DNA of 64,000 nt. Origin: Hydrolagus colliei. Its lineage: Eukaryota. Under the pieces are notes generated by a model that did not search any database, was not told the DNA's origin, and worked only from the letters and a program-made list of their open reading frames with translations. Of this stretch, positions 463 to 61,979 are shown one piece after another. The stretch is from assembly GCA_035084275.1 (NCBI GenBank), contig CM068756.1, positions 14,446,001-14,510,000 of the forward strand, written 5' to 3'. Within the stretch, counting starts at the first letter, position 1. Every line of letters starts with the position of its first letter. The translations under genes and the position numbers were made by a program.

Positions 463-1894
463 TCATGTCCACAATCTAAACAGTCTGGTCCCGGTTAGCA
501 GCGAACAACATAAATTTGATTCCTGTTGATTGATAATTTTATGGGCTACGATACAAATACAATAATGTGAATCAAATCACAATATTATTTTGAAGCAAAG
601 AATGCCTCCTTACCTTTCAAGTTGTGAGATTTTAACATGGTCAACAATGAAGATGGTCAACACTATCACTACCAAGAAACAGGATATATACCGTGAAATC
701 ATCATATTCTCTGACATTCCACGATAACCTAGAAAACAAATATTGGAATGCAAAAGGATTTACATGGAAACTATTCAATAATTAGGCTTTATTGGGAAAA
801 TGCACACGTTCTTAACTATTTTCTATTGGAAGCTACAATGAGGTGGAGGAATATTATAAACTGTGCATTCAATTGATTGAAAACAGTAGAGAATAGCAGT
901 GAATACCAATGCACAGGCAGTTTATTAGTGCTGTTTTAGAGATGTGTTTATATATTATGTGGTAATAGTTCCCCTGAGACTGTGTGCTCAACTTCAAATG
1001 TACCAGAGAGAATGACTCTTCAGACCCAAGCTGTGGCCACTATCGTAATCAAAACTGATTCCATTGGACATCTACTATTAAACTGAATTTCTTTAAAACA
1101 TCTCACAAAAGAGTTTTATTTTAATTACGGTGATTTTTGTTCCAAAGGAATAAGTAACAAAAGGTTTGTTCAAAAAATTAATCAGAAAATTCAATGGATT
1201 GATTAACAAATATTATTTGTTTCATTTGTACGTATGTATTAGTCCAAAAGTTTGATTTCTGATTTCAAACCTAAATATAGGTGGGGAGAGGACTATTGCA
1301 GGACTATTGCAGTTTGGCATGTTACTAAATGCCACAAAAGTAATGAACTTATTTGAAGGGAAGATATTTAGAATTTAATGGATAAACAAGAAATACTCAG
1401 ATCTGAGATATTCTTCGATTCAAAGACTCTACATTTATAGTTGCTAGTTTTGTATATATTAAGTCTACAGCGGGAAGATTGGATGCCTACAAATGGTGGC
1501 GTAAATAAATGTAAATATATTTTCTAGTAGCAAGGTGTTAAACAACAAAAGACTGCAAAACAAGTAGGCATCCTACCTTCCAATGCTGTGTACACTTTAG
1601 GAACAGTGTAGACGGCAACCACTGGAGATTGGAGGGGGACGTTAGATGCCAGACAGGTATAAACAACACCGAACTATACAGGTTGTGTGTCTTCCATATA
1701 GCTAGAAACTTCATAAAGTCCATCTGTATTCTTCTCTTCAGTAAAATTTATCCCAGTTATAACTTCACTACCTTTATTCCAAGTGAGCGTTGCACCGTCG
1801 GGGTAAAACGCAGCCGTTTTACACACAAGAATCTGAGATGTTGATGAATCTCTTTCAGAATCTCTGGGGAATATCCGCAGGGGGGTCGGGGGGA
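463..1894 (-). pseudogene. Type-A (Arg-TM) V-C1 IgSF receptor pseudogene A1: C1 exon 1577-1894, TM exon 614-728, putative terminal exon 463-475; leader and V exon absent
   Basis: C1-set exon VPPTPLRIFP..LVCKTAAFYPDGATLTWNKG..YEVSSYMEDTQPV*FGVVYTCLAS with AG/GT phase-1 ends and an in-frame TAG at 1674-1676 where paralogue A2 has CAG. TM exon GYRGMSENMMISRYISCFLVVIVLTIFIVDHVKISQLER. Homology to the A2 V-C1 intron stops near 3040, before any V exon. Confidence 0.85.
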
Positions 1895-3733
1895 CTGTAG
1901 GACACACATTGGAGTAAAATCGCGTTACTTGTGATTACTTGGAATATAAAACTTTATTCCCATTATTGTTGTTGTCCGAACAAGTTGTCTGGATTGTAAC
2001 AGAAAGAGACTTATCCTGTTTGAGTTTTTTATTTTCAACAATGTTCAGGGTATCAAATGTCAAAAGATGCCTTGCAGGAGTTAAAGCCAGTATTTAGTAG
2101 ATTAATGGTTGAAAGAATCTAACTATGATGACAAGATGAGTAAACGTGGTTTATATTTGATATATGTGGGAAGGATGGGAAGTAATTTGATTGAGCTGTC
2201 AACGAAGGCTAAAAATGCCCAGAGCACGTACTTCTAGTGGAGGAGTAAAATTAGAAGGGTACACAACCCTAACGTTTTGTCTAAACCTGTTAGGTATAAA
2301 ATGAAACATTTTGTATTCATATATAATTCGGTAAAATTGTGGTATCCATTCCCATAAGTGGCTTGAGATGCCGATTCAAATGGGATATGAGGAAAGTGGC
2401 AGGTGAAAATCAATTAAAAGGTCTGCCACCATTCTCCAGCAGCAACTTGTAATTATAAAGTGCTCTAAACGCAGGATCGTGTCCTGCAGAAATCTAGAGA
2501 CTTCACCATAATTAGAAATAGAAGCAAAAGATCCCATTTCACACCAACATTGATTATGGTACACTCTGCTTTTTAATTTATTTGATAGATTTCCAAACAA
2601 TTTTCCATAATTGGAATAGGTAATTCAAAATAAGTTAATGGCTGAATGTGGGACATTGTTTTTGTGTAGATTGTTCAGGTTACCTGAAATTGTCTAACTG
2701 ATTTTAAACATTTGCCTTTCTTATAAATTAGTGAATTGTAAATGTCTGGACCATAGGTTCAAGTGACTTTGACTAATAATAGTAATAATGCTTGCATTAG
2801 ATATAGACCATTGAATGTTCAGATGATTTTCAAAGCATTTCAAAGGATTCACTGCAAAGTGTGATGATTTTGTAGGGCAATATAGCAGCCAACTTTGCAC
2901 ACAGCAATCTACCCACAAACACAAACACAAAGTGTACAACCAACTTGAACTGGGGATTCATTAGCCAGGATCCAGGGAGGAAAAATATGTCATCCCGTTT
3001 CAAATACCTGTACTTCCACATGACTTTTAATATCCACCTAAACAGCCAGAATGGACTTCGGTAATGGCTCATCCAAATGGGGCGAACCTCAAGACATAGA
3101 GCGCTGACCTAGCATTGCATTGGATTGTCAGTGCACACTGTGATCTTCATGTCTTGATGTGGGACAATCTCAATAAATGCGTTCAGGACAAAATACAATA
3201 TATAGGATTGGGTCTGAAACACTGACTGTACAGCGCCTTGGGATGTCCTTGTGACAAGTGGTATACAAGAGTAATTTTGTTGTTGTTATGTGCAGAGTTT
3301 TCAGTGAGAAGCATTTAGCACACGGCTGTAAATTTTAAGTATAAATAAATGTAGAATTTCCAGTAACAAAGTGTTTAACAATAAAAGACAGTAAGACAAG
3401 TAAGCAATCTGTCATCTGATCCTGTGTTGAAGTTACTAACTGTGGAGCTTAATAGTCAGGATATTAATGGTATTCTTTTATTTATTGGACATGTTCCAAT
3501 GTTCCTGAAGCTCTAACCACATACAAGAAGTTTCTCGCTTGCTTATATATGTTTGATTTAAACAATGATAAATACCAATTATTGACTTCAATATGTATTC
3601 CAGATTATAACTATCACTGAGACCTGTTGGTACAATGTATCATCTACTAAGGTAAATGTGGTAAAAACGGGGCAGCCAATTATACACAGCAGTTTCCCAC
3701 AAACAATCATGGATTGAGTGAGCAATTATATAT

Positions 3734-6870: not shown

Positions 6871-7035
6871 TCATACGGTTCCTGATTCCATGACAGTGAC
6901 AGCCTTGTATTTTCTGATATTTACCTCCGCATACTCTGAATTCTTGTCGCTGGGTTTAGCTTTTTTTGTTTGTTTGGAGCGAGTTAAATCCAGGTCTGCA
7001 TAGGTCAGCTTGTCAGCGGCGGCTCCTCGCTTGGT
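6871..7035 (-). CDS. B1 terminal exon with ITIMs LTYADL and SEYAEV
   Basis: TKRGAAADKLTYADLDLTRSKQTKKAKPSDKNSEYAEVNIRKYKAVTVMESGTV*; acceptor ttttgcag; paralogous exon at 34664-34828. Confidence 0.9.
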   Translation of the reverse strand, partial: TKRGAAADKLTYADLDLTRSKQTKKAKPSDKNSEYAEVNIRKYKAVTVMESGTV

Positions 7036-10000
7036 CTGCAAAACAACAACGTTTGAGATTGTGTTTTTGCTGGTTCCATATATAGATACCTCACTCCAAA
7101 AGCCGCTGAAACCTTGGTCCATGCCTTTGTCACCTCTCAGCTGGACTACTGCAATGCCCTCGTTGCCGGTTTCCCCGCCACCACAATCCACAAAATCCAG
7201 CTAATCCAAAACTCTGCCACCCGCATACTCACCCGCACCAAGCTTTGCTCCCCCATTAACCCAGTCCTTGCCAGACTTCACTGTCCCAGAGAGGATCAAC
7301 TTCAAGATCCTTACCCTTGTTTTCAAATCCCTCCACTCCTCTGCACCCCCCTACCTCTCTGATCTCCTTTCTCCCCAAACCAGCACCAGCTGCCTTCGCT
7401 CCACTGGATCTGGCCTCCTCCATGTCCCCGAATCCTCCGCTCCACCTCGGCGGCCGTGCCTTCAGCCACTATGCCCCAAGGCTCTGGAACTCTCTTCCTC
7501 ACTCCCTTCGCCTCACCCCCTTCTCTTCCCAGTTTCAGGTCACAGCTAAAGACCTTTCTCTTCGACTGCGCCTTTGTTCACCTTTCAACCCCTGCCCCTG
7601 GCTCGTTCCCGGAATCCATCACTGTGAAGCGCTCTGAGACGCCGTCCGGCGTGGAGGGCGCTATATAAATCTAAGTTGTTGTTATTGTTGTAGATGTAAA
7701 AAGAATGGTAAGGAAACTGGGCAGCCAGTGTTTATACTACACATGAGCTCCATCCTTACCTATTTTCTGCTATAATTTTTTAATCTCTTCTCCTCATGTG
7801 AGCAACAAGTTTTATGTTACATTATACCAAACCCATCACCCCATGGCCAATTGGTAAATATATTTCAAACTGCGATATCTCGATGTGGATTTAATGTCTG
7901 TAGATCTCAACGATGAGCTGACAGCTGCTTTAATGGTTTGTGATGATCAGTTAATGCTGATTAACTGATTGCTCTCTGGGAACTTGACATCTCAAAATGT
8001 CTGGGTCAGAATACATATGATCGTTGTTAACTTATTTGATGAATTGTTGATTCATATGTAAAGGTACAACCTTAGGAACTTTATAGCCCAGAAAGCCAAT
8101 CTGCACATCATACACGTACTGTCAACTTGAAATAATAATTTATTGAGTCCCATTTACCTGACGTTTCCACAATATTCTTTCAAATTCACCCATTTTACAT
8201 ATGCCCATTAACTTTAGATAAATAAATGATGCTGGTGAAATGCTGGAAGGCTGAACATGTTCAACAACCAAAGGCAGGTTCCAAATGAGGTAGAAGATTG
8301 GAGGAACAAACAAAATCATAACGCTCAAAGTCAAGCCTATTTAACAACCTACATGTTGTTTACCTGGGCATATACTGTGCTCTCATCCTGATGTTTAGGT
8401 CTTGGAGTTTTATTGGAATTTCTCAAATCCAATGTTACATAAGCCACATTGTCACCCACTGCTCCCTCCCCCACCTGTAAAACAAAGTATAGAGTTAAAT
8501 GATTGTTCAGTTGACTTCCTAGGTCTGTACTCTTTGACCATGGTATTGACTAAGTAGGGATTTTAGGGGAAACAATGGCTGTAAGTTAATCGAGTTCTAT
8601 CTAGATGCAGTGAAATTCGTAATTCTAACTGAGGTTTTGCCTTCCATTTCATTTCAATATGTTGCAGAACTGATTACCAGTAAGGTAAATTACTGTCAGC
8701 CAATTGTGTTTATGTAAGTAACAACTTAATGTAAAGGGAAATAAATAGGTGTGGAATTTTGGAGGAGTCATATTAAGGTTGTAAACTTTCAGTTCATAGA
8801 GCAAATAAATGTATTGTTGGAGGTGGGATGAGATTTATCTGGTGTCCTGGCAAATGATAATCATGATAAATTGGCGATAGACTTCATCATGGGACCATAT
8901 TGTGTGCAAGTTGGTTCGAGCAAATAGAGTTGCTGCAAAGACAATGTTACCACCCATGAAGCATTTTAAAAGGGTTGGAATTATAGGCTCCAAAATGATA
9001 ATTACTAAATTGGTCCATTAGTCACCCAATGATTTGGTGATAAACTTACCTGATCTTCATGATTGCCCGATTGAGTCAGGTTTCCCTTTGATCCTAAATA
9101 TGAATAAAATTTACTTCATTAAATATTTATTCCATTTCAATATTAACACTAAAATAATGTAACTTTTCTACATTTTAGGATGAAATGTAATGACATATAG
9201 AATTTTCATCTCACTCATACTTTCTGAAATCCGTAATACTATGTAACTCTTTCCCTTGAATATTTTAAATCTGAAACTTGGTGACTGTCATGTTATTTAA
9301 TCCACAAAATGCAATGTAGATAACCCCAGTACTTCAATTCAAATTTATCTCTATCAGATCAACCACTTTCCACTCTCTTCCAAATCTATCCAGTCACTCT
9401 TCCCATAATCTTTTTATATTTGTCTCATTCAATTGAAAGTTATCTTGTTAAAGCAATATGCAACAGCAACGACCAAACACTATTCCCTAAATCTTTTAGT
9501 TTTTCTTACGAAACTTGGTTGTTTCCTGCAGTCTGGGCCTTGGTATTTCTCCTGGTACTCTCAATAATAAAAACATATTTTCAATGTTACAATTTCAATA
9601 TAATGTGTGGCTGAATTCTGTTACTGATAAACATACACCTGGTGCCTGTCCCTGCAATTGTTTGATGCCATTCATCGCCACAGTTATATAATAATTCATT
9701 GTAGTTTAAGGTGATTGCAATATATTAAGTCAGATTTCAGATATTGGGTGTTGGAAAATGAGAAATTCTGGGATTCCAAAGTTCACCATGTAAAACTGTT
9801 GCGACAACTACAAGTAATTGGTATTGTATAACTGCAACATCACAGAACTCTACCTTCAAATTTGAAGTAACAAGGAAGTTGTTTTTTCTCTTGGCTAACC
9901 ATTGCTGCTTTCTAAGCTTTTGTATCAAAATATAATATTGACAATTAATTGCAATGATATCAGAATTTTCTTACCGTTTTTCTTCTTCAATCGGTATCGG

Positions 10001-13000: not shown

Positions 13001-13299
13001 AAGATACAGATGAAATTGGTATTGGTCCCTCCGATGATAGTTACATGTTTGGGGAGTTGAGTCACTTTCACTGAAGAATCGCCAGCAACTGTCAGAAAAT
13101 AAAGTCAAACAATGATTTCTCAGAAAGTATGCCATGGGAAAACCAAAGCAGTAAAACAGCAAAAAGTAGGTACATATGATACATGGCATGCGGAAACAAG
13201 CATGCACATATTTCATAGAAGAACTGAGTGATAGAATAGACATATACCTGTTGAAATAAAATTTAAGACGGACAGGTACAGAAAGACAAAACTCCCCAT
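6871..13299 (-). CDS. Inhibitory V-C1-TM-ITIM IgSF receptor B1 (SIRPalpha-like tail, NKp30-like VJ-type V), 374 aa; exons 13248-13299, 12768-13088, 11310-11627, 9975-10088, 9050-9093, 8364-8474, 6871-7035
   Basis: Seven exons with canonical GT/AG and consistent phases (52+321+318+114+44+111+165=1125 nt). Signal peptide MGSFVFLYLSVLNFISTVAG; V with C..W..DSGVYRC..GTGPGSQLIV; C1 with LVC..FYP..TW.KDG..YTCLVSH; uncharged TM; tail motifs VAYVTL, TVYAQ, LTYADL, SEYAEV. Confidence 0.9.
7085..7692 (+). mobile_element. L2 3' fragment in the last intron of B1
   Basis: HAFVTSQLDYCNALVAG, GGRAFSHYAPRLWNSLP; (gtt)n tail; absent from the B2 intron. Confidence 0.88.
8364..8474 (-). CDS. B1 cytoplasmic exon with ITIM VAYVTL and TVYAQ
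   Basis: VGEGAVGDNVAYVTLDLRNSNKTPRPKHQDESTVYAQ; phase 0/0; conserved in B2 at 35576-35686. Not in the ORF track. Confidence 0.85.
9975..10088 (-). CDS. B1 transmembrane exon (uncharged, GxxxG)
   Basis: GSGNKNPNLQLGGYAVGGCVFLILLIIIGNRYRLKKKN; AG/GT phase 1/1. Confidence 0.88.
11310..11627 (-). CDS. B1 C1-set Ig exon
   Basis: ORF 11287-11700 core VPPTPIRIF..ALVCETTAFYPKYFTLTWHKDG..VYTCLVSHATL; 318 nt, phase 1/1. Confidence 0.92.
12190..12552 (+). mobile_element. L2 3' fragment in the B1 V-C1 intron
   Basis: Similar to 7320-7690, with tail. Confidence 0.75.
12768..13088 (-). CDS. B1 V-set Ig exon (VJ-type, G strand in the same exon)
   Basis: ORF 12655-13071; acceptor at 13089-13090, donor at 12766-12767; Cys-Trp-DSGVYRC-GxG hallmarks. 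Confidence 0.92.
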
Positions 13300-41993: not shown

Positions 41994-42404
41994 TAGAGTC
42001 CGGCGATATATCGATATATCGCTAAAATCTGATATAGTTTTCATATCGATACACCGATATAGGCATTTCAAAAACATCGATGTATCGAAAAATCAATATA
42101 TCGAGGTAAAAAATCGGAATACGCGCACACAGAACTACAAGACCCAGATTGCTGATCTCTATACACAATGCACAGACCGATGTGCAAAGCCGCCATGTTG
42201 TATTCATAGTCCTCGTATTCATAGCACCCAGAATGCGTGCGCACCCGGAACATGCGCTTACCCAAAATGCGAGCGCATTCTGAGTGCACGAGCCGCACGT
42301 GCATGCGCAGTACGAAAAAACCGAAAATATCGATATTTCGGTATATCTCGATATGAGCCCATCGATATATCTAAATCGGAAAATTTCCATATCGATGGAC
42401 CCTA
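41994..42404. mobile_element. hAT-type MITE with 8-bp TSD CTGCAGAG
   Basis: TSD at 41986-41993 and 42405-42412; TIR tagagtcc/ggacccta; internal atcgatat repeats. Confidence 0.85.
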
Positions 42405-47256: not shown

Positions 47257-47405
47257 ATAGAATCATAGAATCATAGAATTTTATGGCACAAAAGGAGGCC
47301 ATTCGGCCCATCTAGTCTGTGCCGGCTCTTTGAAAAGAGCGATTCAATCCCACTGCCCTGCCCGCTCCCCATAGCCTAATAGACCCGTTCTCCCTAAATA
47401 AAGAA
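47257..47405 (-). mobile_element. CR1 3'-end fragment
   Basis: (catagaat)n followed by the same 3' UTR as the other CR1 copies; absent in copy Y. Confidence 0.85.
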
Positions 47406-49843: not shown

Positions 49844-52800
49844 TCATGTCCACAATCTAAACATTCTGGACCCGATTACCGGTGGTTTCCTGTTCATTGA
49901 TAATTTTATGGGCTACGATATCAATACAATAATTGTGAATGAAACCACAATATTATGTTGAAACACAGAATGCCTCCTTACCTTTCAAGCTGTGAGATTT
50001 TAACATGGTCAACAATGAAGATGGTCAACACTATCACTACCAAGAAACAGAATATAAACCGTAACATCATCATGTTCTCCGACATTCCACCATAATATCC
50101 ATTCCTCCCAGAAGCTAGAAAACAAAAATCGGAATGTAGCATGTTTACTGGATAATCTACGGGATAATGAGGCTGTATTGGGAAAATGCACATTTTCTTA
50201 ATTAATTTCTATTTGAAGCTGCAATGAGGAGGACTAATATAATCAACTGTGAATTTAGGTGATTGAAAACAACTGAGAATTGTGGTGAAACATCAAGGCA
50301 CAGGCAGTTTATTAGTGATGTTATAGAGACACAGTTACACATTATGTAGTAACAGTTCCCCGAGACTATGTGCTGAGGTTCAACTGTTCTAGAGACAAAG
50401 ATTTTTCCGACCCGAGTCATGGATAGTTGGGCACCATCGTAATAAAAACTGGACATCTACCATCACATAGAAAAGGCTATAAAACACCTCATCAACTATT
50501 TTTATTTTAAGTGCAGCAATTATTGCTATAAAGGAGAAAAAGCAGATGATTTGCTCCAACAAGGTGTCAGAAAATTAAATGGATGGTCAGTGAATATAAT
50601 TAATGTTTTATTCGTGAACATGTAAAGTCGAAACGTCCAAATACTGATTTCTCACCTAATTGCAGGTGGAGCGTTCAGGCTATTGCACCTCAGGCAGGTT
50701 ACCAAATAACAAACGTATATTTTGAAAGAGAAATATTTAGAATGTAATACCAAACCCAAAACAATTCTCAGGTTTGAGATTTTCTTCGTTTCAAAGACTC
50801 AATACAGGGCCGTACGCAGGATTTTTTTTTGGGGGGTGCGAATTGCTAGTGATGGGACCAACAATGGCCGGGGGCTTGCGGGCTGCCCCCGAAGCCCCCT
50901 CGAGGTCTCCGACGTTTTACACAGTTCAAGGTCTTATTTAATCGGTTCAGAAGATCTAATATGAACGGTAAATGTTTCATGCCCTTGGTGTTTAAGAGCA
51001 TCATTATTTATTCAGTGTTTATATTTTCCCCGGTAGTCCGTGTCTAATTGGGAAGGTCGAATGTGTTCGTCGATAAAAGCAAACACGATTGTTGACTCGA
51101 TGATGTAAGGAATGCGAACGATAAAGTAAATTACAATCCAATTAACACAGTACAATGACGAATGCTTGATAAATGTATGCGTATAGAGAAAATGATCATA
51201 AACTACAGATTGACGGTACTTAATAAGTTGTTCTGCATTGTTATCCTAAGACTAAATTTCTTTCGGACTGTAATGAACAATAATGTAAGAGTAAAGTATG
51301 AATGATGTGCTCAGATATTCCAGCAAAGCAAATTTTATAAAAGACAAGAAAATATACAGAAACTGAAAATCAGTGTCAAACAGTTAATTCACACGTGTTA
51401 CAAGCCTGTTATCAGCATTATCCTGAAAATATCGTTGAACTGTGAGCAATAGTGTAGTTAGTTTTTATTTATTTATTTAGAATCAAAATTAAAGGCATCA
51501 AGCAATACTGATCTGACGAAAAAATACTTGAAAAAATAAGGGAGGGGAAATTAATTCTTTAATAGCGTTCCGTATTCGAGACGCCTCGGTCGCTTTGAAG
51601 CCAATACGTCAACCGCTCTACCAATATCGATTTTCATATTATAATGAATGTGCATTAACGCGAGGGCTGAAAGTCGCTCTTATACGGAGCAGAATGCTGG
51701 ACACTTAGGCAAACCTCGACCAGGAGATTAGGTGACTCGTGAGGTATATACCAGGCTTCTAAGAGACGCCCTGAACGTTTACTGGCGACAGCATCTGACA
51801 AATAGTGAGCTATATGGTACACTACCACACTGGTATCACAGACATTACCGCAGAGGCGTCTTAGGTTTAGCGGACATAGCTGGAGAAGCCGGGAGGAAAC
51901 TGTCCATAGTGCTACTATCCTATGGGAACCATGGCACGGTCACAGAACACGAGGTAGACCGACCCTAACCTACCTCGCTACATGAAATGCACGGATTATA
52001 TTATTATTCAAAGAGAGAAAGAGTGACTTTCAGAGGAGTCACGTTGAAGAGATTTGTGTAGGAAGAGCTGTTGCTTTGCAGACTCGACTGCACCTGTCCT
52101 TTATATCCCGCTGGTGTGAGGCAGCAGTTCTGGGGACCTCAACTCTAACAGGTGCAGGTTAACAATCCTTTAAGTTATAGCCAATTACGTGACACTGCCC
52201 ACAAACCCTGAAAAGAAATCTCAATTGTCAATCAGTCAGATATGCAACCTCGACCTTGGGAATGTCTTCAGATTCAGAGGCACTGAGTAGGAGGGAAAGA
52301 AAGTTCACACTAACAGTAACTCTGTTCTCCTGTATTACTATCATTTTTATGTTTCCATAAAATGTACAACAGTAGCAGTAAGTACCCTGATATAATGTCC
52401 AGGTTGTTGGTTGCAATTTGCTGCTCGCAAATTGTTCAGCTCATCTACAACAACAACGTAATTAGTTTTGTACAGCGCCTTCACATCAGGAGGTCGTCCA
52501 AAGTTCTGCCTTTCCCATCAATGATGATAATACTCTTTGTATTTGATGCAGCAGCTTGTCATTAATCCGTGACATCTCTTCACAGAATACACTGATTGTG
52601 CGTTTTATCGGCAAAAACGCGGCTACCAATTGCACACGAACACTCATGGATCCAGTGGCAACATTAATATGATTGTTATTGTGAAATATTTTGAAGGCAT
52701 TAATAACCCCGCAAAAGTGATCTGAGAATTCATTTAATGCGCATCCACATGTATAAAGATGTAGAGAAATGAAACCCAACGCTCCCATCTTCCTCCACAA

Positions 52801-55292
52801 ACTGAATCCAACTTCATCCCGATAAGTGTCAAGCTTCAGGTATTTCATGATCTCTGACTTCCTTCACCTGAATAATAATAATCTTTGCATTTTTATATCG
52901 AATTCAATGATTAATGGTATTATTATCTCATGATTGTCATGTTAATCGCTTCAGATGAATCACTCAAATGTAATTTTGTTGTTGGTGTTGTTTACGAATC
53001 AATGCAACTAAACATCCCTATGAGATTTGAATTAACAATAGTTGACTTTTTAAAAGTCACTTAGAATCTTACTTGTGTTAGGTAGTGGGATGGCGTAGCT
53101 TGCAATAGCTGAATTCTTCAGGCTGCTGTGAGACACCAGACAGGTATAAACAGATGCTATCTGGACAGACTGTGTGTCTTCAATAGAGCTAGAGACCTTA
53201 CAGAGTTCCCATGAGTTCTGCTCTTCTATGGTTACTGTCTCTTCCATCTTTATTCCTGATGTTGGTGTAATTTGGTTCTCATCTTTATACCATATGATGG
53301 TGAAATCCTTTGGGTAAAATGCGGTAGTTTCACACACAAGAATCCGATGCTTAGTTGAACTTCCAGATAAAACTCTCAGTGGAGTTGGAGGAACTGTAGA
53401 ATATATAATGGGGGGAAATCGTATTAAATTTCATCAATGAGCAGAACAGACTTTATTTTGATTAATTTCTTTGCAAGATCATGATTCCTGAGTGCAAAAG
53501 AAGGTTCTCTAGATACACAAATATCCCTCTCACAGCAGTAGAAGCATTCCTCTTGCTTCAACTACTTTGTGGTATAACAATTAATGTTGATTCATAATCT
53601 TTGTCTTACATAGTGGAGTTCCTGTAGCTCAGTGGTTAGAGCGCTCGCCTTACAAGCGTGAGACCTGTGTTCGAATCCAGGCAGATCAGGGCAAAACCTT
53701 GGGCATGTTTCCTTACTCCACATGCCTAATAATAATCCCTCCAAAAAAAAAACCAAAATAAAATCGGTCATTTCAATCCATGACTGTTTGTGGGATGCTG
53801 CTGTATGCAATTGGTTGCTGCGTTTCGCTCACAAATATACAGTCAATTCACTTTACAGTATATTGTGTGAAGTCATTTAAGACGTCTAGACGATGTGAAA
53901 AGCGCTAAATCAAATGCAAGGATTATTATTATTATTATTACCAAGTGTAAGAATTAGCAGTTAGAATTCATTTCTGCAAACTCTTGGAACAGAGAAGATA
54001 TAGGATTCTTGACAGATGTGTGCATACTGTGTTCTTCTGGCTCAATTGGCAGCATTCTTCCTTCTGAGTTAGAAGGATACGTGTTCAAACTCCGCGTTGG
54101 GACATGTAATTCACATAGACTATGTTAAAACACCCAATGCAATGCTGTTCTTAGGTTGATAAATTAAACCTGGTTTAGTTCTGCCAGTTATGTTGAACGT
54201 TAAAGATCTCATGTGAATAAATTGGCGGCTGTGTTCGCTTAGAAAGTACTCAGTCTCATGACTTAACAACATATCATGTGCAATGCTTTGGGAGGTGCTG
54301 TATCAAATGAATGGATTGTATGTTTTTAGTCCTGAGAGGATTTGATCAGGTAAAGAGTGAAACACTGAATTTCTAACATGAGTCCGTAAGTTAAAATCTT
54401 TACCACAAACTGTTGGAGGTTGAATTCTGGTTTTACTGAAATTAAACAAAATAGTTTCTGAAGTAGAAGCCATAACACCCTCTCAAAGGAATTTTAAAGT
54501 CACGGTTCCTTTTTATTCTACATGGATCAATTTTATAACTTTTGTAGAATAAGAAATATTTCATCAATTTGTCATGAGTTGTATTACTTCATGTATCACT
54601 TGTACAGATTTTGAAATTAAAATGTTATTTCCACTTAATTTACTCTAATACCTTTATGTGAAATTTATTAATAAACAATGTAAATCACTATATAGAATTC
54701 ACCGTATTATTACTTTCATTGTAATTACCAAATATATTCGCCCTTCATCCACACTCACCCTGCACAGTTAAGCTTGATCCAGGTCCTGTTCCAATTACTG
54801 ATCCCTGAACCATCACTGTGCAGCGATAGACTCCAGAGTCCTGCAAACTCACGTTAAGGAGCTGGAAGAAGCCGCTTCCTTTGCCTTTCACTCCAAATGT
54901 TTTCCTGCTGTCCGCCTGTGTTTCCAAGTAGCCGTCCTCACCCTCTTTTTCCCACTGGAACTGCAGTACTGAACCGCCTTGATAGAAGGGTAACACACAG
55001 CTGAAAGAGACATTTGTCCCTCTGACTGCAGCCACACGTTCGGGGATTTGAATCACTTTGACAAATGAAGCGCAAGGAACTGTCAGAAGTTAAAGTCAAA
55101 CACAGATATATTAGGTGATGTGCCGTGAAGAAAACCAAATGTATAAAAGGGAAAAAAACGCAGGTTTATATGATAAAGGCACATGGACACAAGCTTGCAC
55201 ATGTATCATAGAATATATACGTTATAGCATAAACATATACCTGTTGAAATAAAATATAAGGCACATGGATAGAGAAAGACAACACTCCCCAT
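49844..55292 (-). CDS. Chimeric receptor: B2-type leader-V-C1 (55241-55292, 54759-55079, 53073-53393) spliced to a type-A Arg TM exon (49982-50114) and a short tail (putative 49844-49856), about 276-279 aa
   Basis: The ectodomain exons are near-copies of B2. The only TM exon downstream of C1 is A-type (SGRNGYYGGMSENMMMLRFIFCFLVVIVLTIFIVD). The C1 donor and TM acceptor are both phase 1, so the join is in frame. No B-type TM/ITIM exons occur between 50114 and 53073. Confidence 0.78.
49982..50114 (-). CDS. Type-A transmembrane exon with Arg (A3)
   Basis: ORF 49978-50193 core; acceptor ttttgttttctag, donor AG/GTAAGG; near-identical to 61268-61400. Confidence 0.85.
51740..52000 (+). mobile_element. 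RTE-clade non-LTR retrotransposon C-terminal fragment
   Basis: YTRLLRDALNVYWRQHLTNSELYG, frameshift, then QRRLRFSGHSWRS..ILWEPWHGHRTRGRPTLTY. Confidence 0.6.
53073..53393 (-). CDS. Chimera C1-set exon
   Basis: ORF 53050-53337; 321 nt, phase 1/1. Confidence 0.92.
53613..53940 (+). mobile_element. tRNA-derived SINE, duplicated copy of 39289-39617
   Basis: Same position in copy Y. Confidence 0.85.
54759..55079 (-). CDS. Chimera V-set exon (2 nt different from the B2 V exon)
   Basis: ORF 54745-55056; differs from B2 only by H>D (GEHGY/GEDGY) and one synonymous change. Confidence 0.92.
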
Positions 55293-55367
55293 GTCTGACT
55301 CTGGCTCTGATCAGATGTAATACATAAACGTGGAGTGTTTGATATAGAGTAGGTAGCTGTGACACTG

Positions 55368-55410
55368 ACTTCCTGTTTGTTTGGGTTGGTGAAACCTGGC
55401 TGGTGTGGTT
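55368..55410 (-). promoter_or_regulatory. Chimera proximal promoter ETS+RUNX (copy of the B2 promoter)
   Basis: acttcctgt at 55368-55376, tgtggtt at 55404-55410. Confidence 0.5.
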
Positions 55411-55545
55411 GTTGCAACACGCTTGCAGTAAAATTATGAAAATAATAATTATTCATGGTAATAGAGAAACGTCAATCAAATATATCAACATAAACATTTC
55501 TCTGCCGTCATCCCTCTCCTTGGCACTGCATGACCAGCTGCAGAG

Positions 55546-55945
55546 TAGGGTCCGGTGATATGTCGATATATCGCTTAAACCTGATATAGTTTTCATATCG
55601 ATACGCCAATATAGGTATTTTGAAAAATATCGATATATCAAAAAATCGATATATCGAGGTAAAAAATCGGAATGCACGCACACTGCACTACCAGACCCAG
55701 AATGCTCATCTCTATACAGAATGCACAGACCGAGGTGCAAAGACGCCATATTGTATTCATAGTCATCGTATTCATAGCACCCAGAATGCGTGCGCACCCG
55801 GAACATGCGCTCACCCCGAATGCGCGCGCGAGCCGCACACACATGCACAGTACAAAACCCCCCAAAAATATAGATATTTTGGTATATCTCGATATGAGCC
55901 CATCGATATATCTAAATCGGAAAATTTCCATATCGACGGACCCTA
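55546..55945. mobile_element. hAT-type MITE, duplicated copy
   Basis: TSD CTGCAGAG at 55538-55545 and 55946-55953; TIR tagggtccg/cggacccta. Confidence 0.87.
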
Positions 55946-58900
55946 CTGCAGAGTATCCAAGAACTGTAGTCTGTGCCTTTTCCTCACTGGGTGCTCTCTC
56001 CCTTGATAGTACTATCCATAGACACGTGATTAACTTTCGCACTGATGTCAGCGAAAGGTTAATGTACTTTTCAACTTCCACTGTTGATTCCAGGTATATT
56101 GGTGCTTTATCCGTTTGTGCGTGAATGGCTAGATTTCCCCAGACTTACTCTAACGTAACATGGTAGACAGAAACCATCCCTCTTGCCTTCTGGAAATATT
56201 TCCTTCAGCTTACATACCTTCACTTTCTTGCCAACTAAATAGAGAGAAGCATAATTGCACGGTATAGGAAGTTTCTGTTATTTGAATAACTGGTTGCAGA
56301 CATTGAATTGTATGATATTATTCAGCTTAAACAAAATAATTGGTACTTTCCTTGGAGATGCTGGAATTGCTCAAATCGATAGATAAGTGAATGAACCTAG
56401 CTGCCCCTGCCCTTCCGTCTATTACCCCCTCCCTATGTCTTCCTCATACCCCAGCTCCTACACATACCTGCCTCCACACCTTTGACCTGTCACCCACTCC
56501 TCTCATCCTATAAGTTGTTTAACAAACCACCTACTATCTCAAATTCATCTCTACCCCTCACCTTACCTTCCAGCTCAACCTTCTTGCTACTTATGGACAA
56601 TAAAATTCTCTCACTGTCAACGGGTACCATTCCCACCCTGATATATATGGTCTTCATCTCACCTATCCTTTAAAGCAGCGGATCTCAACCAGGGGTACAT
56701 ATACCCCAAGGCGTAAAAAAAATACTTCCAGGGAGTACAAGTGGCAGTACATTGATTTGTTTAACTATCTTATTTAGCATTTGATAGCCCTCCAAATTGT
56801 ATATTTAATTGTACTGCAAATTGAACTGATCCATGTCCATCTATCAATGCACTCTCTACCTTATTAAACTAGTCTAGAATCTTGGCATCATGTTTGACCA
56901 TGAATTATTCTTTCTAACCCACATCTGTGCAATGTCTTGCTCTGCTTTCCACAACTTCTACTATATCGCCCATTTGTGCTACTATCTTGTACAGTAGGCA
57001 GCCAAAACTCTATTATATGGATTCATTACAACCAAGCTTGACTACGAAAACACCTTACTTGTCGGCCTCCCGAACTTTTGTCTCCAAAGCTTGCAAAATA
57101 ACCCATATATCTACTGGCTTTGTCATTTCCAATGCTAGGCTCCATGAACATATCTCCCCCACCACTTGCCCAAATGTATTTTTGTATTTGTAATTGCTCA
57201 GTGATAATGATGGAATTCGTGAAAATATTTCCCTGTAGATAGTTCTCCAACTTATTACAATTGGTCATAAGCTATGGCATTGAGTGGTACTGCAAAATAC
57301 ACTGTACTGTACTTATAACTTGGAAAGCTGTTAGCTATACTTTTGTTTCGATTGTTTAAGTGTTGCAGCTTAGTTTTGCTGAGATCAAAAATTGTTTGTG
57401 TACCCAATACCTCTGCTGCACGATTTGTGGCCATACCTTCAAGCTGCTGCTGAGCCTCTGACTCTTGTTGCCTAAAATGTCTGTACCACAAAATCGTTTT
57501 TTTTAATGTCTTCAAATGATAGGTGTATATTTTCCACTTTGGCTGTCAATTCATCTGGCTCTCTGACTGTGTTTCAAACTCACACAGGTTACTTAATGGC
57601 CACATAATGGTTTAATGTAGAATCTTTAGAGATGCCATCCTTCACATGAGAAGCTAAATGAAAGGCCACCCTGTCAATTCAAGTAGCAATTGAAGATCCC
57701 ACTGTACTATTCAACAACAAAAGAAAGTATCTTCCAGTTTTCTTGGAATCAGTCCCCCAATTTGATCATTTCCTTTATGGATATTTGGGGGATATTGCTG
57801 TGCACTGAAAACACAGTCAATAAACTTTAGAGTTTATTCTGTGAAGTATGTTGAGACAGCCTCCCAAATATGAAAGAAGTTTGCATTCACATTGATTATG
57901 CTGTCAGCACTGAGGTGAGAAGGTAAGATTTACTTAATGGATGAGCCTCTGATTTTTAAACATGCGACGGTTGCACTCATCAGGACTTGATATACAAATA
58001 GGAAACAAGGACTTGGAAACAAGGTTTGAGGCGGAGACTGATAAGTGGATATTATTTGCATACATGTGGAATTTAACCTTGTGTTGCCATTGAATTCACT
58101 CAGCATGAGCAGGTTATTATTGTGAAGGAAAAGACCAAGGTTAGAACTCCAATGATCTGATTTTACAGACCCAATTACATTTGCAATTGATGAACCTGTG
58201 GGATGGACCAAGAGGAAACACAAACACATGGATTGCATCGAACTTGCCAAGGTGGAAGTTAAAAGGAATCTAGTCATGTTATTTGACAAATCACACATGG
58301 TGTAAAAACATTGCTAGGAGCAATAAACAAGACCAGCAGGGTGTTGTCATATTTACTGCCATACAAAAGTACATTCAGAGACCTGCAGCTCTGTGGTTAG
58401 AGTACTTGCCTTAGAAAGACGAGTCCTGAGTTCAATTTGAGACAGGTCAAAACGTTGGGCAAATTTCCTTACTCCACATGCCTAATAATAGTTCCTCAAA
58501 AAATAATAAATCGGTCATTTTAATCCATGACTGTTTGTGAGACACTGTTGTGTGCAATTGGCTGTTGCCATTCGTCTAATATATATAACAACAACGACAA
58601 AATTGCATTTCTAGAGTGCCTTTCACGGTGGGTGGACCTGTATCAGTTCACTTTGCAGTACAATTGATGAAGCACTTTTAGACAACTGGAACATTTAGAA
58701 GACGTGAAAAGCACTCTATCAAATGCAAGTATTATTATTATTATTTACATTATTACACTGCTCTGGTGGGACAACATCTTGAGTAATGTATAGCAATATA
58801 GCCTCTGTGACATAACGGGGCTTCCCTGTTCCAAATGGGCAATGCAGAGGAAAACAATGAGGATGATTCCCTGCGTTAGAGGAATATGCTTGGAGAGGTG

Positions 58901-61267
58901 TTTAATTGTTTATGGGATTGAAAATCTAACCCCAGATCAACAGTTTAGGTCTGAACAAAACAGCAGAATTAGAGGACATAGGTTTTGAGTTGCAAGGGCA
59001 ATATCAGGATCGATACCCGGTTTTTCTTTACAGCAAGTAAAATAAAAATACCTGGGATAGGTTGGGAGGAAGGTAAGTTGAGACCACCTAATGTGATACA
59101 CAGATTGAGGCTGTGATGGGCAGTTGGTGGGATGGATGTTCAGAAAGGATGAGTGTCAGACAGGCAAAAGGGCGTTCCAGAATGTATACAAACTAAAGAT
59201 GTATTTTATTTTTATGTTTTGCGTTAAACAGACACAAAATACACGCAGCTACAACACCACCTCGTGGAGTATCAGTGCCAACATGAAATATTGCGCCCAC
59301 TTTTTACACCCATTTTGCTACAATACATTACTATACATTGATGAACAACGTTAATAACCCGTGCTCTATACAGCCGGAGACTCTTGTGATAAATTTATCC
59401 TTTGAGATTTACCCATAAGCAGAACGATTGGGGTTTTAACTCTTATTTGTTTCATGTCGGGTATAATATCAGTGGATACACAAAATGCTCAATGGCCACG
59501 TTTCACCCGTTTCACTGCATGTGACGAATTGCACCACATTTTATTGCCTCCCCCCCTCTGTTGATATTTAACATCCTCTCCTCCCAACATACCCCAGTTC
59601 TGACTAAAGGTCGTGGACAAGGTCAGCAGCAGAAGTGAAGCAAATGTATATTTTGGAGGGTTAGATGTTATGTTCTAGACGTTCTGTACAAACGTCCGAT
59701 TCCATTAATAAATCTGATCTGTTTTCACCCTGATAACAAGCTGACCTCCAACAATGCCTCACAAGTGTTTCGCCCCATTAAACATTTCTGTGCCATCTGA
59801 CTTCCTGCCTCAGAGGGTTTATCGAATTGACTTTGTTTTGAGAGTGTAATTCGTAAGTACATATAGTCATTATAGCTGACGTGAAACGTCAGACTCAGAC
59901 ACACTACATTGGGATACAGTGGGCAGTGTGGGACTGCAGGGCTGGTGGAAGGCAAACCGTGTCTTCTTTTACTTAACACATTTTTTTATTCTTAAGTTGG
60001 ACGTGTTTAATATATTTCCACATGTTCTCGCTATTGCTTTTCCCAAGAGCATTGACCATTAATTATTGACAAAGGTTTCCCACAGACCTTGACTGAACAT
60101 TTTATTTATTGCAATTCCAAATGATGAATCAAAGCTGTTATGTTCAAATGTAATGTACGGTACAATCAACTTCATTTGAGATTTTACCGTATGGTATTAC
60201 AGATATCTCACAACAATAGAAATTATTAATAAAACATTAGAGTGGTGGGGGTGGATAATGTAATTGTAGGTTTCTTGCGGCCAAACTGACCAAACTGGTG
60301 TGTAATGTTTTGACCTGGGTCTGGGAAGAAAGTCTGGGAAACCACCAACAGCAAAATTACGTTGGTTTTGCGCCTTTCATGTAGGACCCATGTCCCAAGA
60401 TAACGGGATGTATAACTGCTGATATATAGCGAGTGAAACCAAAACAAGTTGGGTGATATTTCAGTTATATTGCGACTCCTGTGTGGTGTAAGTCAAATGC
60501 CTCAAATCCGTTTGATACAGTCCTGTAGACTGGTTCATAATTTATAATCTTCCTTTTGTTCCAGCCATTGCTTTTCCTCCAGCATAATTCAATCTCCTGG
60601 GATCATTTCTTCCCCACTTCACCTGTAACCAAACAAGCGGTACCAGTGTGAATATCACCAATCCTTTGATTCTATGGTTAAGTGTCCTGATTGCTACTTT
60701 CGACCCAAAACAACATTGAAGTTTCAATCTGAAATGTTCACAACGAGACTGCAAACGGAATATATTTTAGTTTAATTGCAAACAGCGACTAAAGATACCC
60801 AGACAACATTGACATTGATATCCCGCCGATCACTTGGAGATGGAAGCCGAGCCATCACATATTGACTGTCTGATTTGATTTGTCTCTAACACGGTATTAA
60901 TGTATTCTAACACAAAATATTTTCAACTTATCTTGAAGAATGTCCAGTCTCATGTAAGTAGAGCGTGTGGATGACGACACAGACATTAATATACAATATG
61001 AAAACTAATTAACAGATACGGAAGTTATTACACAAACATATTGTTTAATGTTGTTCCAGACGCCTGGAAGTTTGGAGCAGATATCTTTATATCCACTGAT
61101 TATTAGAGAATCCTCCAATAAACAAATCGTCATGTCCACAATCTAAACAGTCTGGACCCGATTACCGGCGGTTTCCTGTTCATTGATAATTTTATGGGCT
61201 ACGATATCAATACAATAATTGTCAATGAAACCACAATATTAGTTTGAAACACAGAATGCCTCCTTAC

Positions 61268-61979
61268 CTTTCAAGCTGTGAGATTTTAACATGGTCAACA
61301 ATGAAGATGGTCAACACTATCACTACCAAGAAACAGAATATAAACCGTAAAATCATCATGTTCTCCGACATTCCACCATAATATCCATTCCTCCCAGAAG
61401 CTAGAAAACAAAAATCGGAATGTGACATGTTTACGGGAGAATCAACGGAATAATTGGGCTGCAGACTTTCTCAATTAATTTCTATTGGACCCATGAGACA
61501 GATATTCAGAGACTTGTGTTTGACAGTTCGCGAATCGAAAGAACTGAGCTTTCGATTCGATTCGCTCAGTTCTAATTGAGCAGAGTTCTAAGTATTTAAA
61601 TGTTATAAAAGACAATTGAACAGAGCGAGAGGGTAATTATGACAGGTTGGCATCCTACCATCCAATCCTGAGTTGGGTTTAGAAACCGTGTAACTGGCAA
61701 CCACTGGATTCCGAAGGGTGACATGAGATGCCAGACAGGTATAAACAACCTCTCTCTCTAAAGGCTGAGTCTCTTCTATAGAGCTGGAAATGTTGAAAAG
61801 TCCATTTGTATTCATTTCTTTCTTTGAATTGATCCCCGTTTTAACTTCATTGCCATCTTTCAGCCACGTGAGCGTTAAATCCCCCGGGAAAAAGTCAGTC
61901 ATTTCACACACAAGAGTCAGAGACTTTGAGGAATTTCCTTCAGGATCTCTGGGGAATATCTTCAGTGGAGTCGGGGGCA
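61268..61979 (-). CDS. Type-A receptor A4, 3' part: C1 exon 61659-61979 and Arg-TM exon 61268-61400; leader and V expected beyond the window
   Basis: C1 VPPTPLKIFP..TLVCEMTDFFPGDLTLTWLKDG..VYTCLASHVTL; TM ..MMILRFIFCFLVVIVLTIFIVD; both open and in phase. Confidence 0.82.

What the first reader, a model, noticed from the sequence alone, without database searches (positions are those of the whole stretch)
463..61979. Alternating activating/inhibitory array of non-rearranging VJ-C1 receptors
Seen: six minus-strand units alternate A1psi-B1-A2-B2-(A3 TM|B3 ecto)-A4. The block 'B 5' end + intergenic + A 3' end' recurs three times (15730~42750~56290; 20640-21000~49050-49340). Each V carries a J-like GxG G strand in one exon and is followed by a C1-set domain, the antigen-receptor chain layout without rearrangement. 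Established: single V+C1 membrane proteins (e.g. the chicken PRARP family) are discussed as relatives of the antigen-receptor precursor. Inference: an A+B pair is the duplicating unit of a birth-and-death immune receptor family that may be undescribed in this lineage.
Basis: partly seen in the sequence, partly recalled or inferred. Interest (0 to 1): 0.8.

Follow-up and report, generated by a model that had tools for sequence, protein, structure and literature searches.

The report
Paired activating/inhibitory VJ-C1 receptor gene array
This stretch of a chimaera-like genome is a tandem array of immune-type receptor genes, each with an antibody-like V domain and one constant-type domain, in "off-switch" and "on-switch" versions. 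One very recent duplication has fused the outside of an off-switch gene to the membrane anchor of an on-switch gene.

Summary
The minus strand carries exactly 4 V-type and 6 C1-set exons, and these assemble with canonical phase-1 splice sites into six units:
- A1ψ, a pseudogene.
- B1, 374 aa, with three ITIMs.
- A2, 262 aa, with Arg and Asp in the transmembrane segment and a 9-aa tail.
- B2, 375 aa, with ITIMs.
- An in-frame hybrid of the B3 leader, V and C1 exons with the A3 TM exon.
- A4, represented by C1 and TM exons only.

An old A+B duplication (65-80% DNA identity) was followed by a recent one (94-98%). The recent one has breakpoints in the two C1–TM introns, and that created the hybrid.

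The V exon is unsplit and has a GxG bulge in the G strand, but it lacks the C′–C″ hairpin. The second domain is a true C1-set domain.

Both ectodomain lineages, A and B, also occur in a cluster of at least 610 kb in Callorhinchus milii. The family, including the conserved R…(D/E)H activating TM segment, occurs in sharks and rays as well. Public annotations give it contradictory automatic names (SIRP-like, Igλ-like, NCR3-like, tapasin-related). I found no paper describing it.

It is best read as a chondrichthyan family of paired receptors evolving by birth-and-death. Its relation to NKp30 and its linkage to the MHC or its paralogous regions remain untested.

The parts
610..1894 (-). A1psi, an A-type pseudogene. 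TM exon at 610-728 (ORF intact, Arg kept). C1 exon at 1577-1894 with an in-frame TAG at 1674-1676. No V or leader exon.
   Evidence: The homology to A2 jumps from 1964 to 4276 and skips the region that holds the A2 V and leader exons.
6871..13299 (-). B1, an inhibitory-type gene of 7 exons and 374 aa. Leader 13248-13299, V 12768-13088, C1 11310-11627, TM 9975-10088, cytoplasmic exons 9050-9093, 8364-8474 and 6871-7035. ITIMs: VAYVTL, LTYADL, SEYAEV.
   Evidence: open frame, all splice sites AG/GT, Ig exons in phase 1. Pfam domains.
21939..25767 (-). A2, an activating-type gene of 4 exons and 262 aa. Leader 25713-25767, V 24976-25281, C1 23500-23811, TM plus stop 21939-22054. The TM segment is ...MVIIRFILCFVVVLALTIIIVDY with a 9-aa tail.
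   Evidence: AlphaFold model with pLDDT 87.
26552..27595 (-). Decayed A-type relic: TM-C1 intron sequence plus the 3' end of a C1 exon.
   Evidence: 26552-27189 matches 842-1426 and 50228-50797 at 70-79%; 27481-27595 matches 1497-1611. Weak C1 profile hit.
34664..41052 (-). B2, an inhibitory-type gene of 7 exons and 375 aa. Leader 41001-41052, V 40519-40839, C1 38751-39071, TM 36645-36758, cytoplasmic exons 35901-35944, 35576-35686 and 34664-34828.
37605..38464 (.). LINE fragment inserted in the C1-TM intron of B2 after the recent duplication.
   Evidence: B3 is contiguous across the insertion site: 52735-52787 matches 37552-37604 and 52787-52900 matches 38465-38578. The fragment is 94.5% identical to 14204-15033.
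37552..50216 (.). Copy 1 of the recent tandem duplication: B2 C1, V and leader exons, the intergenic region, and the A3 TM exon.
   Evidence: 94-98% identical to 52735-61489 in colinear blocks.
52735..61489 (.). Copy 2 of the recent tandem duplication: B3 C1, V and leader exons, the intergenic region, and the A4 TM exon.
49978..55292 (-). Hybrid gene B3::A3, 276 aa and in frame. Leader 55241-55292, V 54759-55079, C1 53073-53393, then the A-type TM exon 49978-50114 (...MMMLRFIFCFLVVIVLTIFIVDH...). The ectodomain differs from B2 at 5 residues.
   Evidence: The donor and acceptor are identical to those of B2 and A4. No B-type TM or cytoplasmic exon lies between 50115 and 53072.
61264..61979 (-). 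A4, an activating-type gene, 3' part only. C1 exon 61659-61979 (its donor lies 9 nt downstream of the A2 position) and TM exon 61264-61400. The V and leader exons are not in the window.
62303..64000 (+). LINE ORF2 (endonuclease part), open to the end of the window, upstream of the A4 C1 exon.
   Evidence: Pfam Exo_endo_phos, 3.7e-15.

Best explanation
The window is part of a multigene cluster of type I membrane receptors specific to cartilaginous fish. Each gene encodes a leader, one unsplit (non-rearranging) V-like exon that ends in a J-like GxG G strand, one C1-set exon, and a transmembrane exon.

B-type genes add three cytoplasmic exons with ITIMs. On ligand binding they would be tyrosine-phosphorylated and recruit SHP-type phosphatases, which dampens the cell. 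This is inferred.

A-type genes stop 9-11 residues after a transmembrane helix that carries a conserved Arg in its outer third and an Asp/Glu-His/Tyr at its inner end. They would signal through an ITAM-bearing adaptor chain bound by that charge, which activates the cell. This is inferred, and the adaptor is unknown.

The array grows and decays by tandem duplication. An old duplication copied an A+B pair. A recent duplication with breakpoints in the C1-TM introns of a B gene and an A gene produced an in-frame gene with a B ectodomain on an activating anchor. This is the classical way in which an activating partner of an inhibitory receptor arises. The duplication history is shown by the sequence. 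Expression and function are not shown.
For: Exons and domains:
- There are 4 V and 6 C1 exons.
- Pfam C1-set matches are above threshold, with E down to 1e-15.
- The gene models are complete and open, with canonical splice sites.
- The A2 model has pLDDT 87.4, two beta-sandwich domains and a TM helix. Its G strand is broken at G112-T113-G114.
- All of the top 50 Foldseek matches in the PDB are antibody light chains aligned over about 215 columns.

Signalling motifs:
- ITIMs VAYVTL, LTYADL and SEYAEV are present.
- The same tails occur in Callorhinchus and in sharks.
- The R-x16-(D/E)(H/Y) TM segment is conserved in Callorhinchus, Heterodontus, Scyliorhinus, Chiloscyllium, Carcharodon and Heptranchias.

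Duplication history:
- Self-alignments define the old and recent duplications.
- B2 and B3 differ at 11 of 694 coding bases, pN/pS is about 0.3, and introns are 95-97% identical.

Phylogeny:
- The A and B ectodomain clades each contain window genes and Callorhinchus genes, with support 96-98.
Against: - There is no transcript or protein evidence for any gene in the window. No identical or nearly identical protein is in the databases; the best match is 72% identical.
- Splicing of the hybrid is predicted, not observed.
- B2 and B3 carry a Cys at a Tyr that is invariant in the 11-sequence reference alignment of relatives (window sequences), which might impair folding.
- The ligand, the expressing cell type and the adaptor are all unknown.
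- A published survey (PMC4016189) placed the origin of the FcR gamma chain in bony fish. If that holds, the adaptor would have to be CD3zeta, DAP12 or something else.
Confidence: 0.75

Rival explanations
1. These are the holocephalan co-orthologues of NKp30 (NCR3). On this view the family is an expanded NKp30 family that kept or gained a C1 domain, with B7H6-like ligands, and is therefore already 'known' under that name.
For: [quoted passage not shown]
- Human NKp30 (sequence checked against PDB 3PV6) shares the ...C.V...G.G.G.G(T/S).L.V end of the domain and 24-27% identity.
- NKp30 also has an Arg in the outer part of its TM segment (own knowledge).
- NCR3 is multigene in elasmobranch MHC regions (PMC10751288, Sup File 1).
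Against: - Against the family V profile, human NKp30 scores 28 bits, below TCR-beta V and V-NAR at about 38 bits.
- NKp30 has one Ig domain with a full-length C-to-F region. This family has a C1 domain and a shortened V domain.
- The elasmobranch MHC-linked NCR3 genes could not be fetched for comparison.
Confidence: 0.2
2. These are SIRP-family orthologues, that is, CD47-type self-recognition receptors of myeloid cells.
For: - 'SIRP alpha/beta-like' is the commonest automatic name for members.
- SIRP alpha (2wng) is among the best non-antibody PDB sequence matches, at 66.6 bits.
- SIRPs are also paired receptors with an ITIM form and a charged-TM form, and they contain C1-set domains (PMC2785349).
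Against: - SIRPs have three domains (V-C1-C1); this family has a single C1 domain.
- In the C1 profile search of the PDB, Ig constant regions and UrIg2 rank higher and SIRP is not in the top 60. That ranking uses whole-chain scores, which favour chains with several C1 domains.
- The cytoplasmic tail has no significant match outside Callorhinchus.
- Activating SIRP beta uses a mid-membrane Lys (own knowledge), not an outer Arg plus an inner Asp.
Confidence: 0.1
3. Most of this part of the array is dead. The open frames are young duplicates not yet decayed, and the hybrid is a by-product without function.
For: - Of the seven A- or B-type gene pieces in the window (the six units plus the relic at 26552-27595), A1psi and the relic are clearly decayed, and A4 lacks V and leader exons within the window.
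- LINE insertions are frequent and recent.
- No transcript evidence is available.
Against: - B1 and B2 diverged long ago (non-coding identity 73-80%), yet both keep seven intact exons, splice sites and ITIMs.
- Coding sequence is more conserved than introns in the young pair, and pN/pS is about 0.3.
- The family and its motifs are conserved in both holocephalans and elasmobranchs.
Confidence: 0.1

Closest known systems
SIRP family (SIRP alpha/beta/gamma; PMC2785349)
   Same: N-terminal V domain with a J-like G strand encoded in one exon, followed by C1-set domain(s). Paired inhibitory (ITIM) and activating (charged TM, short tail) members in one cluster. Discussed as relatives of antigen-receptor precursors.
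   Different: SIRPs have two C1 domains and a full-length V domain with C'-C'' strands. Their activating members use a Lys. Significant sequence similarity is limited to the Ig domains.
NKp30 / NCR3
   Same: Non-rearranging VJ-type domain with a glycine-rich F-G region, and an Arg in the outer part of the TM segment. Multigene in some lower vertebrates.
   Different: NKp30 has no C1 domain. Similarity is weak: 24-27% identity, and 28 bits against the family profile. Orthology was not tested.
NITRs of bony fish (PMC2442602)
   Same: Large clusters of rapidly evolving receptors with a V domain carrying a J-like motif. Most members are inhibitory with ITIMs and a minority are activating with a charged TM segment. 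They are the likely functional analogue.
   Different: In NITRs the second domain, where present, is I-type rather than C1. They are known only from bony fish.
UrIg / UrIg2 of elasmobranchs (PMC12227049)
   Same: Non-rearranging VJ exon followed by C1-type domains in cartilaginous fish. UrIg2 (9dmx) is the best non-antibody PDB match of both the two-domain query and the C1 profile.
   Different: UrIg proteins have three to nine C1 domains and form disulfide-linked homodimers. UrIg is secreted; UrIg2 has a TM/cytoplasmic domain. Neither is reported as an ITIM/charged-TM pair. This family has one C1 domain and no membrane-proximal Cys in A-type stalks.
Ig light chains / TCR chains
   Same: Two-domain V-C1 layout with a GxG bulge. 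All top Foldseek matches are light chains. The only non-chondrichthyan whole V-C1 match among the 30 named hits sampled was a snake Ig lambda, at E = 1e-30.
   Different: There is no V/J split and no RSS; a heptamer is present but has no nonamer partner and is not conserved. The C'-C'' hairpin is missing and the F-G loop is tiny. These proteins have their own signalling tails.

Membership tests
Paired activating/inhibitory Ig-like receptors (as a kind) | Near-identical ectodomains joined to opposite signalling modules | tested here: met
   The B2 and B3::A3 ectodomains differ at 5 of 231 residues. One has an ITIM tail and the other an Arg-bearing TM segment.
Paired activating/inhibitory Ig-like receptors (as a kind) | Inhibitory members carry canonical ITIMs, (S/I/V/L)xYxx(I/V/L) | tested here: met
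   VAYVTL, LTYADL and SEYAEV in B1 and B2. Phosphatase binding was not tested.
Paired activating/inhibitory Ig-like receptors (as a kind) | Activating members have a charged TM residue and a short tail, and associate with an ITAM adaptor | tested here: inconclusive
   The conserved R-x16-(D/E)(H/Y) TM segment and tails of 9-11 aa are shown. Association with an adaptor cannot be tested here.
C1-set Ig domain | Match to the Pfam C1-set model above the gathering score, and the hallmarks ...C.....FYP...W... and Y.C.V.H | tested here: met
   31-58 bits against a cut-off of 21 for all six exons. The alignment shows these hallmark positions as invariant.
VJ-type (antigen-receptor-like) V domain | V and J encoded in one exon, with a GxG beta-bulge in strand G | tested here: met
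   A single ORF runs from acceptor to donor. Both Gly residues of the GxG are invariant in 15 sequences. In the model strand G is interrupted at residues 112-114.
VJ-type (antigen-receptor-like) V domain | Full V-set topology including the C' and C'' strands (CDR2) | tested here: not met
   The Trp-to-Cys distance is 39 residues (A) or 44 (B), against 53 in NKp30. No strand is predicted between C and D. Pfam scores the domain about equally as Ig_3, I-set and V-set.
Rearranging Ig/TCR genes | Separate V and J segments flanked by RSS (heptamer, 12/23 spacer, nonamer) | tested here: not met
   The exon is unsplit. The CACAGTG after the Cys codon has no nonamer partner (at most 6 of 9 matches) and is absent from the Callorhinchus orthologue.
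SIRP family | Three Ig domains, V-C1-C1 | tested here: not met
   Each gene has only one C1 exon, and there are no further Ig exons in the window.
SIRP family | Orthology or synteny with the SIRP locus; CD47 binding | not testable with these tools
   No eukaryotic genome browser was available. Flanks of the Callorhinchus cluster were not reached.
NKp30 (NCR3) | A single Ig domain followed by a stalk and a TM segment with Arg | tested here: not met
   A C1 exon is present in every unit. V-only products exist only as predicted isoforms in relatives.
NKp30 (NCR3) | Specific sequence relationship of the V domain | tested here: inconclusive
   28 bits against the family profile and 24-27% identity, no better than unrelated V domains.
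NKp30 (NCR3) | Location in MHC class III (AIF1-DDAH2 interval) | not testable with these tools
   The white-shark member P0060 lies on a 193.5-Mb record, whereas the published chr19 gene table ends at 115.6 Mb. It is therefore probably not the MHC chromosome, but the accession could not be mapped to a chromosome.
NITR | Second domain, when present, of I type; restricted to bony fish | tested here: not met
   The second domain is C1-set. Named family members are all from cartilaginous fish.
UrIg / UrIg2 | VJ followed by three or more C1 domains; disulfide-linked homodimer | tested here: not met
   There is one C1 exon and no Cys in A-type stalks.
   No PRARP sequence or primary paper could be obtained. 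It is only mentioned as a VJ gene in PMC10751288 and PMC11599192.

The most novel reading that the evidence does not exclude
This family, found across cartilaginous fish, is a surviving membrane-bound, non-rearranging VJ-C1 lineage that branches closer to Ig light chains and TCR chains than SIRP or NKp30 do. That would make it a relic of the receptor type from which antigen-receptor chains were built. At the same time it would serve as the so far unidentified NK- or myeloid-type paired receptor system of sharks and chimaeras.
Probability: 0.15. Interest if true: 0.85.

Novelty: new variant of a known kind. Interest (0 to 1): 0.58.

Why it matters
Single-exon VJ genes joined to C1 domains are being actively sought as clues to how antibodies and T-cell receptors began (PMC12227049, PMC10751288).

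In the literature I could search I found no description of polymorphic paired receptor families in cartilaginous fish comparable to KIR, LILR, SIRP or NITR.

This window shows such a family in action. It has inhibitory and activating members and a conserved activating anchor shared between holocephalans and elasmobranchs. It also contains a freshly made activating copy of an inhibitory receptor, created by intron-to-intron duplication.

The family is present in many public genomes under contradictory automatic names, so a proper description and nomenclature would be useful. The work also gives concrete genes for expression, ligand and adaptor studies.

Tried and rejected
- PDB sequence searches with the V exon alone and with a 15-sequence V profile gave only generic Ig matches and no specific relative.
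- Word-indexed protein searches restricted to the V domain or to the cytoplasmic tail returned only Callorhinchus relatives. SIRP alpha and other ITIM receptors were not significant.
- I walked the Callorhinchus scaffold MU249845.1 with nine gene look-ups, seven of which returned a locus. These showed family genes from 15.22 to 15.83 Mb but never reached a non-family flanking gene, so synteny stays open.
- The white-shark member P0060 has coordinates (103.77 Mb) that fall numerically inside the class III interval of the published chr19 table. Its record is 193.5 Mb long while that table ends at 115.6 Mb. I therefore reject this as evidence of MHC linkage.
- The read-through ORF GNLIIMILAFDIA... 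after A-type C1 exons looks conserved. It is explained by a dispersed repeat with a core of about 32 bp, not by an alternative exon.
- The RSS-like heptamer in B V exons is a codon by-product.
- No tandem repeats were found.
- The papers by Flajnik et al. 2012 and Ohta & Flajnik 2015, and the supplement of the elephant-shark genome paper, are not held. I could not check whether 'elephant shark NKp30' in those works refers to this cluster.
Full report
**What is in the window**

The window has no gaps and about 40% G+C. Stop-to-stop ORFs with Ig hallmarks lie only on the minus strand. Pfam assigns four of them to V-set/I-set/Ig_3. It assigns six to C1-set at 31-58 bits against a cut-off of 21.

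Profiles built from the family find exactly these ten exons and nothing else above noise in all six frames. The one exception is a weak C1 remnant near 27.5 kb.

**Gene models**

I used Callorhinchus proteins as guides and then read the splice sites directly. This gave open reading frames with AG/GT at every junction and phase-1 boundaries around all Ig and TM exons.

| Unit | Structure | Product and features |
|---|---|---|
| B1 (13299-6871) | leader, V, C1, TM, three cytoplasmic exons | 374 aa; uncharged TM; ITIMs VAYVTL, LTYADL, SEYAEV |
| B2 (41052-34664) | same seven exons | 375 aa; same motifs |
| A2 (25767-21939) | leader, V, C1, TM | 262 aa; ends 9 residues after the TM segment; TM segment carries Arg in its outer third and Asp at its inner end |
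| A4 | C1 (61979-61659) and TM (61400-61264) only | upstream region occupied by an open LINE ORF2 on the other strand (62303-64000) |
| A1psi | C1 with a TAG stop at 1676-1674, and an intact TM exon | no V or leader exon |
| B3::A3 | leader 55292-55241, V 55079-54759, C1 53393-53073, then the A-type TM exon 50114-49978 | reading frame preserved; 276-aa protein with a B ectodomain on an A anchor |

For B3::A3, the A-type TM exon is the next downstream exon after the C1 exon.

**Domains**

The V exon is unsplit. It runs through ...Y.C......G.G(T/S).L.V to the donor, and both glycines of the GxG are invariant in 15 family sequences.

An AlphaFold model of A2, built with a 30-sequence alignment, has mean pLDDT 87.4. 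In it strand G is interrupted exactly at G112-T113-G114, which is the bulge typical of antigen-receptor J regions.

The same model shows no C' or C'' strands. The Trp-to-second-Cys distance is only 39 residues in A and 44 in B, against 53 in human NKp30. The domain is therefore a shortened, I-set-like V domain with a J-type G strand. It is not a full antigen-receptor V domain.

The second domain is an ordinary C1-set domain. The family C1 profile matches Ig lambda, mu, epsilon and gamma constant domains and the shark UrIg2 protein best. Over both domains together, the 50 best structural matches in the PDB are all antibody light chains, with about 215 aligned columns and 22-27% identity. The TM-scores are only 0.33-0.45, and the PDB is heavily biased towards antibodies.

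There is no recombination signal. A CACAGTG directly after the Cys codon of the B V exons has no nonamer partner and is not conserved in Callorhinchus.

**History of the array**

Self-alignment shows two layers.

*Old layer (65-80% identity).* 1-13582 is colinear with 21219-41331, so [A 3' part ... B] was copied as a block. The B-to-A intergenic regions 13301-21025 and 41054-49351 form a colinear chain of weaker matches.

*Young layer (94-98% identity).* 37552-50216 corresponds to 52735-61489.
- The left breakpoint lies in the B C1-TM intron.
- The right breakpoint lies in the A TM-C1 intron. A3 keeps about 690 bp of intron homologous to A1 and A2, followed by unrelated filler up to 52734.
- A tandem duplication or unequal crossover between these two introns necessarily places a B leader-V-C1 block upstream of an A TM exon. 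This explains the hybrid.
- An 860-bp LINE piece (37605-38464) entered B2 afterwards, because B3 is contiguous across that point.
- B2 and B3 differ at 11 of 694 coding bases (5 synonymous, 5 non-synonymous, pN/pS about 0.3). Their V-C1 introns differ by 3-5%.
- The A3 and A4 TM exons differ at 1 of 137 bases.

A further decayed A fragment lies at 26552-27595. A pseudogene, a relic, a hybrid and frequent LINE insertions together are the signature of birth-and-death evolution.

**Relatives**

No database protein is identical to any window product. The best hits are Callorhinchus milii proteins at 70-72% identity for both A and B types. The window therefore probably comes from another holocephalan.

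In Callorhinchus the family occupies at least 15.22-15.83 Mb of scaffold MU249845.1.

Maximum-likelihood trees of V and C1 separately give two well-supported holocephalan clades. Clade A has support 98/98 (V) and 97/97 (C1). Clade B has 96/94 (V) and 98/97 (C1). Each clade contains window and Callorhinchus genes, so the two ectodomain lineages predate the split of the two species. Within B, the window genes and the Callorhinchus genes form separate groups.

Tail type does not follow ectodomain lineage. Callorhinchus has A ectodomains with ITIM tails (P0005-P0007) and with the activating anchor (P0003). Exon exchange of the kind caught in this window is therefore recurrent.

An exhaustive profile search found 145 cluster representatives at E below 1e-30. 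Thirty sampled names were all from cartilaginous fish (Callorhinchus, Heptranchias, Heterodontus, Mustelus, Cetorhinus, Carcharodon, Scyliorhinus, Chiloscyllium, Hemiscyllium, Mobula, Amblyraja, Narcine), apart from three weak outliers. Earlier hits added a sawfish member, Pristis. The outliers were a snake Ig lambda and frog and viper multi-Ig proteins.

Among the fetched sequences about 45 have ITIM tails. Seven have the TM pattern R-x16-(D/E)(H/Y), and six of those seven are from sharks. Both the inhibitory and the activating anchor thus occur in holocephalans and in elasmobranchs, so both predate their split.

**How it most likely works**

What the sequence shows:
- The proteins are type I membrane proteins with a V(J)-C1 ectodomain.
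- One form has ITIMs.
- The other has a charged TM segment and almost no tail.
- The newest activating gene has an ectodomain 98% identical to that of an inhibitory neighbour.

What is inferred from the established behaviour of paired receptors (KIR, LILR, SIRP, NITR; PMC3533184, PMC2442602):
- B forms recruit SHP phosphatases after ligand binding and raise the activation threshold of the cell.
- A forms pair through the TM Arg with an ITAM chain and activate the cell.
- Rapid duplication, exchange and loss are driven by changing ligands, possibly from pathogens.

The ligand, the cell type and the adaptor are unknown.

**Comparison with known families**

The family works like the SIRP or NITR families, but it fails their architectural definitions: it has one C1 domain rather than two, and C1 rather than I-type.

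It shares with NKp30 the VJ-type end of the domain and an outer TM Arg. However, human NKp30 scores lower against the family V profile (28 bits) than unrelated TCR-beta V or V-NAR domains (about 38 bits). NKp30 also has no C1 domain.

The supplementary gene tables of Verissimo et al. list five NCR3 genes between AIF1 and DDAH2 on white-shark chromosome 19, and three next to ddah2 in sawfish (PMC10751288). Whether those genes belong to this family is the key open question. I could not fetch them.

The one apparent hit, white-shark P0060 at 103.77 Mb, is on a 193.5-Mb record that is probably not chromosome 19.

**Novelty and verdict**

The public annotations call members of this family, variously:
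- SIRP alpha- or beta-like
- Ig lambda-like
- TCR beta-like
- tapasin-related
- MHC class II beta-like
- NCR3-like
- NCR3-ligand-like

. This spread shows there is no curated identity.

Seven full-text searches found no description of the family. Three possibly relevant sources are not held.

I rate it a new variant of a known kind: a paired-receptor family with a truncated VJ domain and a single C1 domain, found in both holocephalans and elasmobranchs. The window adds a clean, datable example of how an activating partner is made.

The caveats are the shortened V domain, the non-fixed link between ectodomain lineage and tail, and the unresolved relation to NKp30.

Noticed in passing
62303-64000 (+): A LINE ORF2 (endonuclease domain) is open for 566 codons to the end of the window. 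It is inserted upstream of the A4 C1 exon, so the A4 V and leader exons, if they exist, lie outside the window.
   Followed up: partly
37605-38464; 14204-15033; 14803-15420 (-); 29298-30188 (+): These are LINE and reverse-transcriptase fragments. The piece in the B2 intron is 94.5% identical (inverted) to the one at 14204-15033 and is younger than the B2/B3 duplication. This points to a recently active element.
   Followed up: partly
26552-27595 (-): A decayed A-type gene fragment (TM-C1 intron plus the 3' end of a C1 exon) lies between A2 and B2.
   Followed up: yes
23462-23493 and at least 10 other sites in the window; L001-L007: A dispersed repeat with a core of about 32 bp is present in many copies in the window and in every Callorhinchus locus fetched. 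It creates a misleadingly 'conserved' read-through ORF (GNLIIMILAFDIA...) after A-type C1 exons.
   Followed up: partly
12829, 40580, 54820 (B V exons); 25042 (A2): A perfect RSS-type heptamer CACAGTG (CACTGTG in A2) sits at the codons just after the second Cys, where Ig/TCR V segments end. It has no nonamer partner (at most 6 of 9 matches) and is not conserved in the Callorhinchus orthologue, so it is most likely a codon by-product.
   Followed up: yes
11289-11310, 38731-38750, 53053-53072 (just downstream of the B C1 donors): Reading through the B-type C1 donor gives a short ORF, (G/S)K(I/V)L..F followed by a stop, in B1, B2 and B3. The same ending occurs in the Callorhinchus model P0021. 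This could be a soluble isoform made by intron retention.
   Followed up: no
B2 and B3 C1 exons (about 38860 and 53180): B2 and B3 have Cys in place of the Tyr in the motif GLYKVSS (they read ELCKVSS). That Tyr is invariant in the 11-sequence reference alignment of relatives. The result is an unpaired Cys in the C1 domain of unknown consequence.
   Followed up: no
61401-61658: The TM-C1 intron of A4 is only 258 bp, against about 850 bp in A1psi and 1445 bp in A2. A4 has lost the intron segment that A3, A1 and A2 share.
   Followed up: partly
[quoted passage not shown]: The published table annotates five NCR3 genes between AIF1 and DDAH2 in the white-shark MHC, and three in sawfish. This is a multigene NKp30 family whose relation to the present family is untested.
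   Followed up: partly
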